Shown: piece by piece, positions 47,458 through 54,137 of the stretch
Position numbering within the stretch: position 1 is the stretch's first letter
Layout: every line of letters begins with the position of its first letter
Translations under genes and position numbers: made by a program
The notes under the pieces: model-generated
Seen by the model: the letters and a program-made list of their open reading frames with translations, nothing else
What the model was told of the DNA's origin: nothing
The model's database searches: none
Origin: Chlorokybus atmophyticus
Lineage: Eukaryota; Plantae; Mesostigma and Chlorokybus algae
Direction of reading: 5' to 3'
Assembly: GCA_009103225.1 (NCBI GenBank)
Contig: RHPI01002503.1
Span: 563,585-627,584, forward strand
DNA: 64,000 nt

Positions 47458-49653
47458 TTAACACAAGCGAAACGTCCTTGAGGATGCTACTGCAAAAGCA
47501 CGCATAACATCCAGCTCCAGGTCGAATGCATGGTGTTCATGTGGCACAAGCCACTCTGAGTCAATGTACCGCGTGAAGTAGTGGTACGCGTACACACGCC
47601 CCACAACCAACCTGCGAACCAGCATTGGATTTGGTTCAATCGCAGCAACATCGCATACTTGCACAAACAACCGCTCTCACCTCCCCTGTGCCGGGCTCCC
47701 GCACGTGTCCACAGCTGGCGCCTGCTGCTGCGCCAACCCTGCCTGCGCAAGGCCTTGCGGTGAGCCAACAACAACTCCCCTCCCCCTCGCCGCCCTGCGC
47801 GCTGCAGCGCTCGACACGGACGTGAATGTCTGCACCGTCTGCCCACTGAAGCCGTACGCCGTCACGCGCTCGCACAGCTGCAGCAGCACGTACACGCCGA
47901 GAAACCCGCTCGACGGCTGCAAGCCAAAGGGCACAGATTGGTTGCGGGAGGCGTGAAAGAGTACTTTATGTGGGTGAAGAAACCAATCACAAGAACACAA
48001 TTGTGTGGTTGCTCACCGCCACGCCGCCCGTATAGTTGGCACCCTGCACCTCAGCTGCTCTCCTATACTCCCCCTGTATCACACCAGTTCACCCAACAAG
48101 TCAACAACCACCTCCCTCCCCACTCCCACCCCACTCTCTGTCCATACCAGCATCTCCCGTGCGCGTGTCATGGCGCCGTTCCCGAGCACTAGGACACGTG
48201 CGTCAGGGCGGTGGCGGCGGACGCGCGCGTGAAGGTCAGCGATCTGCTCCGCACTCGAACGCGTCGATACGAGGGAAGCGTTGCGCTCGAGATCAGTAAG
48301 AAGAGCGGTGAACTCGCCGTGAGCAGCGTACAGCGTCGTCCACTGAGGGTTAAGTAACGTGAGTCGGCGCGTGATAGAAGAGTCGATGCTTGGAACTTGA
48401 TGACTCAAATGCTTGGGTGGTTTGTTTAAAGGTTTGGTTGTTAGATGAACATGTTGGTTGGTGGTCGTTATTGCTGTGGTGGTGGTACTGCAGCTTGTTG
48501 TTTCTAATCCGTGTGTGGGCGGACCTTCTTGTTGAGGAGGCGGAAAGTTGTTTTGGAGCCCACATAGCGCTCGTACTTGGCGGTCGGTGCTTGGTTGATC
48601 CTCATCACCGCGTCGCAGGCATCGATCTCCGGACCAAAGCTGCACAATCACGCACCCACATAGATAACACCAAAAACTGTTAAGCCGCTGTGTAGCGTGT
48701 GAAGCACGACTTATGTGTCTTTGTTCAATTTGCAATCCAGTGTGCAAGCATGCAGCATGCATGGTCGCATAACGGACATGAATTCACACACGCATGCAAG
48801 CACACACGCAGACACACACCGGCTGGCGTGAAGCACGGCGGAGTTCCCGACCAGCGCACATGTCTTGAAAGAGAAGTCTGGCGCTCTCGCCGGCAGGACC
48901 TCTGTGCTGGACCCAGATAGAAATCACTCCATTACTCGACAGAGAATTGGCACACAATGATCATCATCACAAACCCAACATGCACACATTGTCCCCTACC
49001 CTCATTGGTGATTGGGTCGTGCGGCCTCAATGCGCGGTGCGTCGCACGCGAGAGAAACAGCTTTGAACGTGCGTAAGAATGCTTCTTTGAAGTTAAAAGA
49101 TATGATGCCAGGGAGTTCAAGTCTCCCGGTACTGCAGTTGTTGTCGTTGCTGTTGTCTTAGCTGAACGCCCTCTCCCTGTAGGCAAACCCAGACACCCAC
49201 ATATCAGCATCCCAAACTAGCTTGGAACCCATGAAAGTCTATCATTCTAAAGTGTAGTGTATCATACTGTTGCTCAATGAACGCTATGGCATCACCTGTA
49301 GTTTTTTTTAGACTGTGGTCCTTTGCCCCCTTCTCCTCCGCTTCCTCAACATCCTCTCCGTCCTCATCCTCCTCAACCTCCTCACCCTCATCGTCCTCAA
49401 CTTCCCCCTCGTTCTCCACCTCATCATCTCCTCCTTCATGATTAACTTCTGTCTCACCCTTCCACTCCAGGCCAGCCAGCATGCCAGGGGATGCAGTAAT
49501 AACTGCTGCTAGCGCGCCTGGAGCCCGCGTCGCCCCCGCCAGGCGCCAGGACGCCAGCCCCGCCCCCAGCACAACCCAGCAGCAGAGTATCAGCGCCAGC
49601 ACCGTCGCCCTTCGCCTCCACCACCACCACCGAGACGAGGACGACCCGCCCAT
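47458..49653 (-). CDS. GT29 sialyltransferase-like glycosyltransferase (type II membrane protein)
   Basis: N-terminal TM and E/D-rich stem. Sialylmotif L: KTCALVGNSAVL...FGPEIDACDAVMRINQAPTAKYERYVGSKTTFR. Motif S: PSSGFLGVYVLLQLCERVTAYGF. Motif III: YHYF. Motif VS: HAFDLE. Confidence 0.88.
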
Positions 49654-49875
49654 CGCCACCGCCGCCGCCGCCAAGGCGGACGCCAGCAACCAGGAAGAAG
49701 TCTATTTATAGCTGCGGCTTTCTTGTTGTCACATGCTTACCGTTGAGTCAGTTTGAGCAGGTTAGGTCAGTCGCTAAAACTCCCGCTGCGCTCGGTTAGG
49801 CTGACTGACTCGGTGTGCGCGGTCTCCGCCGCTGCTGCGGAGGAGGAGGTGGTGGCGGAGGAGGAGGAGGTACGG

Positions 49876-51228
49876 ATGGAGGGGGCTGAACAGGTCGGTA
49901 GGCTGGACAATAGTGGGCCTGCGTGGGCGGGTGAGGTTGCGGGTAGCGCGTGGGGCGTTGTGGAGCGGTACGGCTGGTTGATCCTGGGCGTGCTGGTGGC
50001 GGTGTGGCTGGTTGGACCGGCCGTCAAGGCGAGGATCGCTGCCATATCAGACGCCCTCACAGCTAGATGTGAGGGCACGGTTGATATTGGTTGCTATGAT
50101 AGTGCCTGTGCCTGTTTGACTGCTCCAAGCCACCAGCAAGCGAGCGCCCACAGACACGCATGCGAGTTGATTGTCAGTTCTTTGTCAACGACGTCAAGCT
50201 GCAACTAGATGCTTGGCGAAATGCTCAGCCGTGTTTGTACGTGTTTGTTCCTTTCGCTTGCTACACACTGTCGGACACCAACCCTCCGATGTTTGTTTGA
50301 TCACTGTTCATCACTTGGGTCGCTGTCGACGAACGTCACTAGTTTTTTCATTTGCTTCCTCCCTAATATACCGATTGTTGCCACTTGAGACCCCAAACCA
50401 AAAAGTGTACCACCCCCGCATGTATCATATCGTACACTACCATCTTCACGACCATGATCATGACCACTACCGCTCCCGCAGCCCCCGAGCGCGAGGCCGA
50501 GTGGTCCCGCCGCGCCCGCGACGCCCGCGCCCGTCAGCAGGAGCGCGAGGCGGCGGCGTCGCGTCAGTGGGCTGAGGGGGAGCCGGAGCGCCGGGCCGCC
50601 GTCGCCGCCGCGCGACTAAGGGAGATGCAGGAGAGGAGCGGGGGGGCGGGGATGCAGTTTCGCGGGAAAGGACGCCGCCTCGGATCTGAGGTGAGAGGAG
50701 ATGAGACACAGTCGTAGTGGTGTTACATTGGGTAGAACTGTTTCAGGTGAGTGATTTGGAGTGAACGGTGAACATCGGTCATGTGCTGCGTTGAAGTATG
50801 TAAGTGTGCGATAGTGATCTGCATCGCAGTCGAGTTTGAGTTTGTCGTGAATCTCGAGCTGGCTGGGACACAACCAACATGTTGCGGTGGTCGACATGTT
50901 GTTGTGGTATTGCAGCCGTCTCAAGACTCGGAGGGAGATTATGCCAGCCCCCCCGCATGCGCGCCTCCCAGCCCGCCACCGCCACCGGCGCCACGCACCA
51001 GCAGCCTTCCACGGCCACCACCTCGCTCTGGTAAGAGAGCATTCAACACACTGCATTACACATCTCTCACATGCAACACATGGGCACTGGTTTACATAGC
51101 ATACCGATCCCCGCAACATGTGCACCGATGCAGGCCACAACCCGCTGGGGCGGTCCTCTAATGTACATGGGTTCGCCCCGAGCGGCAGCATGCGCAGCGC
51201 TCCCTTCCGCCGCCGCGGATGACGTTAG
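49876..51228 (+). CDS. SELENOS: Selenoprotein S (SelS/VIMP)-like protein, 203 aa, Sec at residue 202 (UGA 51220-51222)
   Basis: Exons 49876-50068, 50482-50690, 50916-51030 and 51134-51228 are phase-consistent (612 nt). Single TM (ERYGWLILGVLVAVWLV), charged coiled region (..AAARLREMQE..FRGKG), Pro/Gly-rich tail with HNPL...RRRG-TGA-CGT-TAG. SECIS downstream. Confidence 0.85.
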
Positions 51229-51407
51229 CTTCCCCGACACCGCGGGCCCGACATCTATGAGATGGTATTCACAAGATGTCTACCCGCGCGTGCCGGAGAT
51301 TCAATGGTGCGGTGAAGAGTGTCAGAGGTTAGCGGGTCAACCAGCGCGGTTGCCTGCAGCCCGATCGCATCTCTCTTGTGTGATAAGGTGGTGGTTGATT
51401 GATTGTT

Positions 51408-51475
51408 GGCCTCTATGTGATGCGCTGGCTGCTAAAGCTCAGAAAAGGAGCGCGGCCGGCGTGGAGAAGTGTGCC
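51408..51475 (+). promoter_or_regulatory. Type II SECIS element in the SelS 3' UTR
   Basis: GUGAU core (51417-51421). 11-bp helix II GCGCUGGCUGC/GCGGCCGGCGU, fully paired with G-U allowed. Unpaired AAA (51434-51436), mini-stem GCUC/GAGC, 3' GGAG (51463-51466). Confidence 0.88.
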
Positions 51476-51800
51476 CTAGTTTCGTTCGCACCGCGAGCAG
51501 GGCTTTTGGCCAGAGTCGATCAATTGAATTGTCAAATAGGAAATGTAGGACATGTTTGTCCATCTGTTGGGTGCTTTGCTGTTGGCACACGCCCTTCTTA
51601 TTTGCAATAGTCATTGTTGTTGCTTTCACAGTGTGAAGTTCGCACTCAACAGCTGCACATGCGACACACACATGCACGCAAGCATGCACACCAATGCAAT
51701 GCAACGTGACAGCAAAACCAGGCTGCCTTGCTACAACGCACACAACAGTGTTCAACACATCCTCCCCAAAGCAATACTTCATGACAACCTCTCATCTCCC

Positions 51801-54137
51801 TCACGGCGACTCCGACTCGGAGTTTCCCCCCACAATCTCCCTCAGCGCCTGCATCCTCGTGGGCGGGGACCCCAGCTCCACCGCTTCGGGCGGCGGCCTC
51901 TGTCTCGACGGCGGCCTCGGAAACCTCTGATGGACTGTCGACGATTGTTGTTGTTGTTGTTGTTGTTGGGAGAAGGGTGGTCCTCCTCCTGCTCCGACGA
52001 GTGGGGGACGGGTGATGCCGCCCTGGAGTGGGGCAGTTTCGGGGCGGGGTTGTTTGCGGGAGTGGGTGGAGGAAGAGGAGTGGGTGTGGGGTTTGGAGCC
52101 GGGAGGGAGGAAGGAGAGACCCTCTGGTGAAGGAGAGTGGTGAGTATGTGGTGTGTTGTGATGGTTTGGGTAGTGTTGGGAGGTTACCTGTGAATAAGTG
52201 CAGGGCCTCTGGTGGTGGACGCTGCCTTGACGGCGGCCTGTTGGAGCTCCCCTGTTGCACGCACGCACAAACAAACACACATCCACATGTGTACTCGCTC
52301 GCCATGCCCACTCACATCCCCACTTCACTACACCCACAAGGTCAACATCTCCACCTGCACTCATCACCTACCTCGCATTCCACCGTGTGCAGTCGTCCCG
52401 GCGCGCTCCCCCGTCTTCGCTGGGCGTAGAACGCCTTGAGCAGGCTGGTGGACTGGTCCACGCCAGCAACAGCGGCGTTGCCAACATTGCCAACATTGCC
52501 GACATCGTCGTCAACATCGTTGTCGTCGTCAACATTGGGTTTGAAGGCTGGAGAGAACAACTCCGCCGCCAATGCCGACAGGTCCGTCTCCTTCGTGGAG
52601 GCGCTCCTCGCATCAATGCACCCGTCTTGCATCTGTTGGAGGGTTGTGTGTTTGGTGATGACTTGATGATGAGGTGATGGGGTGGTGTTGTTGGGTTGTT
52701 ACCCTTGCTGTGTCGACACTGCTGGTTGCTGGACGCAAGTCTGCGGTGTTGAGGGAGGCGCTGCTGTAGGCCGAAGGCACGCTGGAGAGCGTGACTGCCT
52801 TCTCGTCCTCGTCCTCCTCACTGCGCAGCAATAATACGCCTTGTATGTGTCGCTTCTGGTTAAGGTGATGCATATGTGCACGCGCAGAACACACACGTGC
52901 CTTGAGCTGATGAGGCCGTCGAGCTCGTTGCCCAGCCCGTGCGACGGCACACGCGAGTGCGGACCATGCCTGCTGCTGCGTGCAGAAGAGAGGCTTTCCG
53001 GCGCCGGCGTTGTGACCAAAGCCGCCTGGTAGCAACAGAGACAAATCAATGTGTGCATCTATGAGCCATGTCAGGCACACGTACGCGCACGCATACTTGA
53101 CAGGGCAACATGTCCTCCTGTTACCATGTAGTCGCTGAGCGATATGTGATCCATGGGTATCTCCCAATTATTGACGTTGCGGTGCTCATCGTCTGCGCTG
53201 TTGTAATTGTTATGCTTGTAGCTGTTTGAGACGCCATGATGATGCGAATGCCCCCGGATTGGATGACTGTTGACGTCACTGCTGCGCTTGTTGTGTACTT
53301 CTTGCGCACGAGCTCTGGTGTGTGCGCCACTGCTGCCGGCGTCTTCCACATCCTCTACCTCGAGCTGTAATCGTTGGGTGCTTACCTCTTGTTGTTGTAC
53401 TAAGTGGAGATGCGTATGTGACAGGTAAGTATGGTGGGTACCTGTCCTGCCCATGAAGACGATGCCGAGGGAGGGCCCCTTGCATTGTTCAGTGCGCTCG
53501 GACCCTCTGCAGACACACATGTGACGTACATATCCAAAAGTATGAACGACGTACACGCACACGCATACGCACATGCGCACGCGCTAACTACAGCAACAAT
53601 GCTAAAAACAATGGCTAACTTACGCCAGCTTTTCCTGCGGGCGGCGCCTTGGAAGAGCAGCGGCGTGTCTCCCCTGCTGCTCGCTTTTGAGCCAGGGTCT
53701 TGCGCGGACCGGACTACAACAGCGTCCTGTGCACATGCACGTTGGTGTGTGTCCGTGCGTTTACCTGCGTACAACAAGAGCAACTTGCGACATGTGTCGC
53801 TTAGGCGTACGTTCATTGACACGGTCTTCATGCGGCCTTTGTTGCGGTACGACCTGCCCGCAAGCTGCAAGACGTTCTGCCCTTCACCTGCGATCAACAC
53901 ACATGCAATCAAGGTAGGATACAACCACATGTCACCACGCACTCGTACACGCACCCCTCCCACACTCCCATTACTTAACAACACGCATACCTCCCGCGGT
54001 CGACAGCGCGCGTGCCCACATCACCGAGGATGATCCCGCCCCACCCTGGCCCTGACTCTGACTCTGAACCTGACTCTGACTCTGAAGCTGTTGCTGGCGG
54101 TCCCACAGCCTACTATTGTTGTTGCTGTTGCTGTTGC

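What the first reader, a model, noticed from the sequence alone, without database searches (positions are those of the whole stretch)
49876..51228. Hidden selenoprotein: SelS-like gene with penultimate UGA (…RRRG-U-R*)
Seen: the strong donor GAG|GTGAG at 50690/50691 bypasses the ORF-track stop at 50717. Two more exons extend the frame to ...HNPLGRSSNVHGFAPSGSMRSAPFRRRG-TGA-CGT-TAG. Established: SelS and SelK are single-pass ER membrane ERAD/p97 adaptors with Sec at or near the penultimate position, and green algae keep selenoproteomes that land plants lost. Inference: a genuine Sec-containing SelS that standard annotation would truncate or miss. Unlike mammalian SelS there is no Cys just upstream of Sec; the nearest is ~55 residues back, so its redox partner may differ.
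Basis: partly seen in the sequence, partly recalled or inferred. Interest (0 to 1): 0.8.

Follow-up and report, generated by a model that had tools for sequence, protein, structure and literature searches.

The report
Selenoprotein S gene in Chlorokybus
A four-exon gene of the green alga Chlorokybus atmophyticus encodes a membrane protein of the selenoprotein S family, and its annotated UGA stop is very probably read as selenocysteine, so the public protein model is two residues short; it is an overlooked member of a known family, not a new kind of gene.

Summary
The four exons, the GT-AG junctions and the tail GGA-TGA-CGT-TAG are in the sequence as described. The spliced product up to Gly201 is identical to the public Chlorokybus atmophyticus protein Chlat1/6294, which treats the UGA as the stop.

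- **Family:** its best Pfam hit is Selenoprotein_S, but below the cut-off. Its nearest relatives are clear members (14 of 16 aligned proteins hit PF06936).
- **Conserved tail:** nine independent relatives, read from their own cDNA or contigs, all end Gly-TGA, then one or two codons (mostly Arg), then TAA or TAG.
- **SECIS:** 197 nt after the UGA, on the same strand, lies a GUGA-type form II hairpin. It has a 12-bp helix, unpaired AAA and a 4-bp mini-stem. It is the only strict-pattern hit in 128 kb (about 0.02 expected) and the most stable of 62 relaxed candidates.
- **Weaker points:** Rfam finds no SECIS, but it also misses those of all nine relatives. A covariance model built from the relatives scores the hairpin only weakly.
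- **Missing evidence:** no RNA reads could be obtained.
- **No partner Cys:** there is no Cys near the Sec, and this holds for all algal relatives.

Verdict: a Sec-containing SelS orthologue, a new member of a known kind. The scan had already noted the hairpin (s1-174216).

The parts
49876..50068 (+). Exon 1 coding part (Met1 to first base of codon 65). It holds the short N-terminus, the conserved E-R-Y-G-W motif and the hydrophobic segment at residues 32-50 (about 49969-50025).
   Evidence: Translation. Identical to P0001. tblastn hit of P0002 at 49960-50067. Hydropathy maximum at residues 32-50. AF2 helix 16-62.
50069..50481 (+). Intron 1 (GT...AG)
   Evidence: It is spliced out in the public model P0001.
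50482..50690 (+). Exon 2: an Arg/Ala/Glu-rich long helix with a VCP-interacting-motif-like RX5AAX2R at residues 101-111 (50589-50621) and the conserved G-R-R-L-G-S-E block.
   Evidence: Translation. tblastn of P0002 covers 50484-50690 at E=5e-9 and ends at the exon end. Motif regex. AF2 helix 66-119 with pLDDT above 90.
50691..50915 (+). Intron 2 (GT...AG). It contains the in-frame stop at 50715-50717 that ends the unspliced ORF.
50916..51030 (+). Exon 3: Pro-rich disordered linker holding the only Cys (residue 149).
   Evidence: Translation. tblastn of P0002 at 50922-51032. Low pLDDT.
51031..51133 (+). Intron 3 (GT...AG)
51134..51228 (+). Exon 4 coding part: the H-N-P-L motif, the basic tail, Gly201, TGA (codon 202), CGT (Arg203) and TAG.
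   Evidence: Translation. tblastn of P0003 at 51133-51183, E=0.003.
51220..51222 (+). Proposed Sec codon (UGA). It lies 86 nt after the last exon junction and is penultimate in the reading frame.
   Evidence: The same G-TGA-(1-2 codons)-stop is found in nine relatives.
51408..51475 (+). SECIS-like hairpin, form II. Parts: GUGA 51417-51420; helix II 5' arm 51421-51432; unpaired U then AAA 51433-51436; mini-stem 51437-51440 with 51448-51451; 7-nt loop 51441-51447; helix II 3' arm 51452-51463; GA 51464-51465. Flanking helix I pairs lie outside these.
   Evidence: MFE fold. Only strict-pattern hit in the window, with about 0.02 expected. Best energy of 62 relaxed candidates. Found at full model length by covariance models built from relatives, but only at 8.3-10.8 bits.

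Best explanation
This is the Chlorokybus atmophyticus orthologue of selenoprotein S (SELENOS/VIMP). The mRNA has four coding exons. The UGA at 51220-51222 is recoded to selenocysteine by the GUGA-type form II SECIS hairpin 197 nt downstream in the 3' UTR, using the alga's own Sec machinery. That gives a 203-residue protein ending Gly-Sec-Arg. By analogy with animal SelS (inferred, not shown), the protein would sit in the ER membrane through its single N-terminal helix. It would extend a long cytosolic helix carrying an RX5AAX2R motif that could recruit the AAA ATPase CDC48/p97, and it would present a flexible tail with a reactive selenol at its tip. No Cys lies near the Sec, so the intramolecular selenenylsulfide of the mammalian protein cannot form. 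The redox partner would then have to be a second Sec in a dimer or a thiol of another protein (inference).
For: - **Gene model:** the exons translate as proposed and match the public protein P0001. Relatives recover every exon by tblastn.
- **Family:** PF06936 is the best Pfam hit of P0001 (E=0.0041). There are 20 relatives in an exhaustive HMMER search, the best at E=3.6e-16. 14 of 16 aligned members hit PF06936, best 3.6e-17. One cluster contains the Monosiga protein that UniRef names Selenoprotein S.
- **Architecture:** AF2 predicts helices 16-62 and 66-119 and a disordered tail. The TM segment and the VIM regex are present.
- **Sec codon:** nine relatives from independent cDNA or contigs all end G-TGA-(Arg / Gly / Gly-Arg / Arg-Arg)-TAA or TAG. 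The chance of such a tail is about 3-6% per gene.
- **SECIS:** the MFE fold has the canonical shape. It is the single strict hit in 128 kb against about 0.02 expected. It is top-ranked among 62 relaxed candidates.
- **SECIS in relatives:** they carry AUGA or GUGA hairpins 87-348 nt after their UGA. Two of the nine (L007 and L011) are GUGA type. On an alignment of seven of these hairpins, 12 of 13 consensus pairs show compensatory changes.
- **Literature:** GUGA_AA is the common SECIS pattern in green algae (PMC3473315). Sec-containing SelS is known in Ostreococcus (PMC2375036). Algal SELENOS occurs almost only in the Sec form (PMC7539508). C. atmophyticus has the Sec machinery (PMC6627142).
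Against: - P0001 itself scores below the Pfam gathering cut-off (17.5 against 29.8 bits).
- It matches the solved SelS fragment only at E=4.9.
- Rfam reports no SECIS here. The same search also misses the hairpins of all nine relatives, so this blank carries little weight.
- Covariance models trained only on relatives give this hairpin 8.3-10.8 bits. That is E=9.6 and 1.8 over the whole window and 0.029 in the 1 kb after the stop, and one alignment used a far-fetched 3' partner.
- No RNA-seq, 3'-end, selenium-labelling or peptide evidence was obtained.
- The 12-bp helix of the hairpin is GC-rich, and its folding energy is not unusual against shuffles (z=-0.99).
Confidence: 0.85

Rival explanations
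1. The gene is a SelS homologue, but in this subaerial alga the UGA is now simply the stop. On this reading the protein is the annotated 201-residue form, and the hairpin is a relic or a chance structure.
For: The public annotation ends at the UGA. Chlorokybus has a small selenoproteome, and subaerial algae tend to lose selenoproteins (PMC6627142). Loss of Sec would cost only two residues. Rfam and the covariance models give no significant SECIS score.
Against: The codon after the UGA is still Arg followed directly by a stop, as in most relatives. The hairpin keeps every SECIS feature with an uninterrupted 12-bp helix, and it is unique in the window. The genome keeps the Sec machinery (PMC6627142). 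Algal SELENOS is almost never found in a non-Sec form (PMC7539508).
Confidence: 0.1
2. The main transcript keeps intron 2 or uses another last exon. The protein would then end at the 50715-50717 stop and the UGA would never be translated.
For: No RNA reads could be laid on the locus. The unspliced ORF 50385-50717 exists.
Against: The public model uses the same junctions. Relatives align across all three junctions, for example the L-G-S-E-P block across exons 2 and 3 and the S-G-(F/H)-N-P-L block across exons 3 and 4. All sites are canonical GT-AG.
Confidence: 0.04
3. It is a selenoprotein K-type protein rather than SelS, because the tail Gly-Sec-Arg resembles the SelK ending.
For: The tail with Sec close to the end, followed by a basic residue, recalls SelK (my own knowledge of SelK, not tested with a SelK sequence here).
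Against: No SelK/SelG family appears in the Pfam scan at E up to 10, while PF06936 is the top hit. The protein has 203 residues and a roughly 55-residue second helix that SelK lacks. The relatives are PF06936 members.
Confidence: 0.01

Closest known systems
Human/animal selenoprotein S (SELENOS, VIMP; Pfam PF06936)
   Same: - Size of about 190-200 residues.
- Short N-terminus, then a (Y/N)-G-W motif leading into one TM helix.
- A long helix with an RX5AAX2R-type motif.
- A disordered Gly/Pro-rich tail with an (F/Y/H)-N-P-L motif.
- Sec encoded by a UGA one codon before the stop.
- A SECIS in the 3' UTR.
   Different: There is no Cys about 14 residues before the Sec, whereas the choanoflagellate relatives P0015/P0022 keep it. 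The residue after Sec is Arg. The tail before Sec is R-R-R-G rather than a Gly run. The SECIS core is GUGA rather than AUGA. Sequence similarity to the Pfam model is below the cut-off.
Ostreococcus SelS and other algal SELENOS (Lobanov 2007, PMC2375036; Jiang 2020, PMC7539508)
   Same: A green-lineage Sec-containing SelS. Algal SELENOS is reported almost exclusively in the Sec form. The GUGA_AA type of SECIS is reported as common in green algae (PMC3473315).
   Different: Those reports cover chlorophytes and other algae. I found no paper in the searched library that names SelS in Chlorokybus or any streptophyte. Liang 2019 counts three selenoproteins in C. atmophyticus without naming the families in the text held, so this gene may or may not be among them.
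Selenoprotein K
   Same: A single-pass membrane protein with a disordered tail and a lone Sec near the C-terminus, without a nearby Cys.
   Different: SelK is about half the length, has no long second helix and belongs to a different Pfam family. There was no hit here.

Membership tests
Selenoprotein S (PF06936) | Direct match of the protein to the Pfam family model above its gathering score | tested here: inconclusive
   P0001 scores E=0.0041, 17.5 bits against a cut-off of 29.8, over residues 28-114 against profile positions 32-111. It is the top-ranked family.
Selenoprotein S (PF06936) | Homology to undoubted family members | tested here: met
   phmmer gives E=3.6e-16 to P0002 and 2.3e-14 to P0003 over nearly the full length. 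P0002, P0005, P0006 and P0013 carry PF06936. 14 of 16 aligned members hit PF06936, best 3.6e-17.
Selenoprotein S (PF06936) | One N-terminal transmembrane helix followed by a long helix and a disordered Gly/Pro-rich tail | tested here: met
   Hydropathy maximum at residues 32-50. AF2 helices 16-62 and 66-119 at pLDDT above 90. Residues 120-201 have no secondary structure and low confidence.
Selenoprotein S (PF06936) | VCP/p97-interacting motif RX5AAX2R in the cytosolic helix | tested here: met
   The regex matches at residues 101-111, and within two residues of the same alignment position in six relatives. Binding to CDC48/p97 was not testable.
Selenoprotein S (PF06936) | UGA codon at the penultimate position, conserved among homologues | tested here: met
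   The window reads GGA TGA CGT TAG. Nine relatives read G-TGA-(1-2 codons)-TAA or TAG.
Selenoprotein S (PF06936) | SECIS element in the 3' UTR | tested here: inconclusive
   By structure and pattern it is met. Rfam is blank here and on all positive controls. Covariance models from relatives give only 8.3-10.8 bits.
Selenoprotein S (PF06936) | Actual incorporation of selenocysteine | not testable with these tools
   This needs 75Se labelling or mass spectrometry.
Selenoprotein S (mammalian type) | Cys about 14 residues before Sec, forming an intramolecular selenenylsulfide | tested here: not met
   The only Cys is residue 149. No algal relative has a Cys in its last 28 residues, and six have no Cys at all. 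Only P0015/P0022 (one cluster, which holds the Monosiga protein) have it.
Selenoprotein K | Match to the SelK family model; length about 90-100 residues; no long second helix | tested here: not met
   No such family appears in the Pfam scan at E up to 10. The protein has 203 residues and a helix at 66-119.

The most novel reading that the evidence does not exclude
The algal SelS proteins, this one included, form a group that works with a lone selenocysteine and no resolving cysteine; several have no cysteine at all. The mammalian Cys-Sec redox cycle therefore cannot be the ancestral or general mechanism. The selenol would instead act between two tails of a dimer (diselenide) or on a client or partner thiol. 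It would be held next to a CDC48/p97-recruiting helix that predates the split of the plant and animal lineages and survived in the earliest streptophyte branch before land plants lost it.
Probability: 0.3. Interest if true: 0.5.

Novelty: new member of a known kind. Interest (0 to 1): 0.35.

Why it matters
- It corrects a public gene model: the annotated stop is a Sec codon, and two residues including the probable active one are missing.
- It adds a named family to the very small selenoproteome of an early-branching relative of land plants. SelS, an ER quality-control adaptor in animals, was therefore still present on the streptophyte side of the green lineage.
- The lack of a partner Cys across the algal relatives bears on how the C-terminal Sec of SelS works.
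- A practical point: Rfam's SECIS models missed all ten hairpins examined, so they cannot be relied on for green-algal selenoprotein screening.

Tried and rejected
- **Pfam and PDB searches with single exons:** nothing useful. Only the public full-length protein gave the SelS hit.
- **Word-indexed protein search:** with P0001 and with the family alignment it returned only P0001 itself and one relative, because low-complexity words saturated it.
- **Exact look-up of contigs encoding P0001:** none on record.
- **Profile search of solved structures:** no SelS chain above noise.
- **Rfam:** blank on the window and on the relatives.
- **Two covariance models from relatives:** they detected two held-out relatives at 17-18 bits, but scored the window hairpin only at 8-11 bits.
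- **Pfam on ten neighbouring ORFs:** nothing.
- **tRNA scan of the window:** no tRNA genes.
- **Supplement of Liang 2019:** the part held as text does not name the three Chlorokybus selenoprotein families.
- **SelK reading:** rejected.

Full report
**What is in the sequence.**
The exon translations are 64, 69, 38 and 28 residues, with two split codons, followed by TGA, CGT and TAG.
- All three introns are GT...AG. The donor at 50690/50691 removes the in-frame stop at 50715-50717 that ends the unspliced ORF.
A region-restricted search with the plain ORF that contains exon 1 returned a public protein, P0001 (eukprot jgi/Chlat1/6294/Chrsp44S05871, 201 aa). P0001 is identical to the four-exon model up to Gly201. 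All whole-protein work used that stored protein.
- This identifies the genome as Chlorokybus atmophyticus. It also shows that the public annotation has the same splice model and simply treats the UGA as the stop.
- tblastn of relatives against the window recovers each exon separately. Exon 2 scores E=5e-9 and ends exactly at the proposed exon end. Exons 1, 3 and 4 score E=0.003-0.015.

**Family.**
- The best Pfam family for P0001 is Selenoprotein_S (PF06936) at E=0.0041 and 17.5 bits, below the 29.8-bit cut-off. The solved SelS fragment 5kiu matches only at E=4.9.
- An exhaustive HMMER search of 1.84 billion representatives found 20 relatives of 125-486 residues (19 of them at most 226). The best are P0002 (E=3.6e-16) and P0003 (2.3e-14), aligned over nearly the full length.
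- Many relatives carry PF06936. Of 16 aligned proteins, 14 hit it, the best at 3.6e-17.
- One relative comes from the prasinophyte Pterosperma. One cluster holds the Monosiga protein that UniRef names Selenoprotein S.
- The alignment shows the shared plan. It runs from E-x-Y-G-W into a hydrophobic helix, through a basic and acidic helix and a G-R-R-L-G-S block, into a Pro-rich linker. Then come an (F/Y/H)-N-P-L motif and a basic tail that ends in Gly.
- AlphaFold2 with this alignment predicts helices 16-62 and 66-119 at pLDDT above 90, and an unstructured rest.
- A VCP-interacting-motif regex (RX5AAX2R/K) matches residues 101-111. It also matches within two residues of the same position in six relatives.

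**The UGA.**
- I fetched the cDNA or contig of nine independent relatives. Every one ends Gly-TGA, followed by one or two sense codons and then TAA or TAG.
- Six have TGA-CGN(Arg)-stop exactly as here. The other three have Gly, Gly-Arg and Arg-Arg.
- At the window's composition, a stop one codon after a stop is expected about 3% of the time, and within two codons about 6%.
- These proteins are only about 30% identical and their 3' UTRs are unrelated in sequence. A ten-for-ten tail is therefore best explained by translation through the UGA.

**The SECIS.**
- The MFE fold of 51395-51490 has the form II SECIS shape. Its parts are a helix I, an internal loop with GUGA (51417-51420) opposite GA (51464-51465), and an uninterrupted 12-bp helix II. 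These are followed by an unpaired U-AAA, a 4-bp mini-stem and a 7-nt loop.
- A strict pattern scan of both strands of the window finds this site and no other. Simulated sequence with the same dinucleotide make-up gives 0.02 hits per 128 kb, and none with 12 bp in 150 trials.
- A relaxed scan gives 62 candidates, of which this one is the most stable at -24.6 kcal/mol.
- It lies 197 nt after the UGA on the coding strand. The relatives have comparable AUGA or GUGA hairpins 87-348 nt after their UGA. L011 and L007 are also GUGA type.
- On a plain MAFFT alignment of seven of these hairpins, RNAalifold finds the same two-stem consensus, with compensatory changes in 12 of 13 pairs.
- The literature states that GUGA_AA is the common SECIS pattern in green algae (PMC3473315).

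**Weak points.**
- Rfam reports no SECIS in the window, even when given only the 3' region. The same search finds none in the nine relatives either, so this blank says little.
- Covariance models trained only on the relatives detect two held-out relatives at 17-18 bits. They give the window hairpin only 8.3 and 10.8 bits. That is E=9.6 and 1.8 over the whole window and 0.029 within the 1 kb after the stop. The second model's alignment used a distant 3' partner.
- I read this as a limit of a low-information model built from irregular helices. It is still not positive evidence.
- The hairpin's folding energy is not unusual for its composition (z=-0.99).

**Context.**
- Liang et al. 2019 report the complete Sec machinery and three selenoproteins in C. 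atmophyticus. The text and held supplements do not name the families.
- Sec-containing SelS is known from Ostreococcus. Algal SELENOS is described as almost always Sec-containing but narrowly distributed.
- No paper in the library names SelS in Chlorokybus.
- Other notes of this scan, which I did not check, list further selenoprotein genes in this genome, including a GPX with a GUGA-type SECIS. One earlier follow-up reached the same reading of this hairpin.

**Mechanism.**
- Shown: the gene structure, family membership by homology, the predicted architecture, the conserved UGA tail and a SECIS-shaped hairpin.
- Inferred from what is established for animal SelS:
  - ER membrane location;
  - recruitment of CDC48/p97 through the helix motif;
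  - a redox or client-binding role for the terminal selenol.
- Differs from the animal protein: no Cys lies near the Sec. The only Cys is residue 149, and no algal relative has one in its last 28 residues. Six relatives have no Cys at all, while the choanoflagellate relatives keep it. The intramolecular selenenylsulfide described for the mammalian protein cannot form here. A diselenide between two tails, or a mixed bond with a partner, is the likely alternative (inference).

**Verdict.** This is a real, probably Sec-containing SelS orthologue whose public model is two residues short. It is a new member of a known kind, of moderate interest.

Noticed in passing
L001-L011 and window 51229-51650: Rfam release 15 found no SECIS in any of ten algal SelS 3' regions at E up to 10, including the textbook AUGA...AAA...GA hairpin of L001 (832-877).
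   Followed up: yes
window 51413-51523: Covariance model R2 paired the 5' arm of the hairpin with a second complementary stretch about 50-60 nt further on (about 51510-51523, followed by GA) instead of the adjacent arm. This may be an alternative pairing or an artefact of the model.
   Followed up: no
window 49832-49870, 49617-49632 and 51946-51966: Short triplet repeats flank the gene: a GAG/GTG run just before the start codon, a CAC run upstream and a TGT run downstream.
   Followed up: no
window 49204-49689 (-): A 161-aa ORF on the opposite strand has a long acidic tract and ends 187 nt before the SelS start codon. It is possibly the first exon of a divergently transcribed neighbour. It has no Pfam hit.
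   Followed up: partly
P0004, P0007 (relatives): Two relatives of this family do not end in the Gly run. They continue with unrelated C-terminal residues, possibly from frameshifted or differently spliced transcripts, or as forms without Sec.
   Followed up: no
L007 1063-1121: This relative's GUGA hairpin has no AA at the usual distance from the core and instead has a C-rich apical region. Its tail is Gly-Sec-Gly-Arg.
   Followed up: partly
P0020: A 486-aa repeat protein scored E=7e-4 against the N-terminal part of P0001. It looks unrelated (a chance match to a repetitive sequence) and was left out of the alignment.
   Followed up: no
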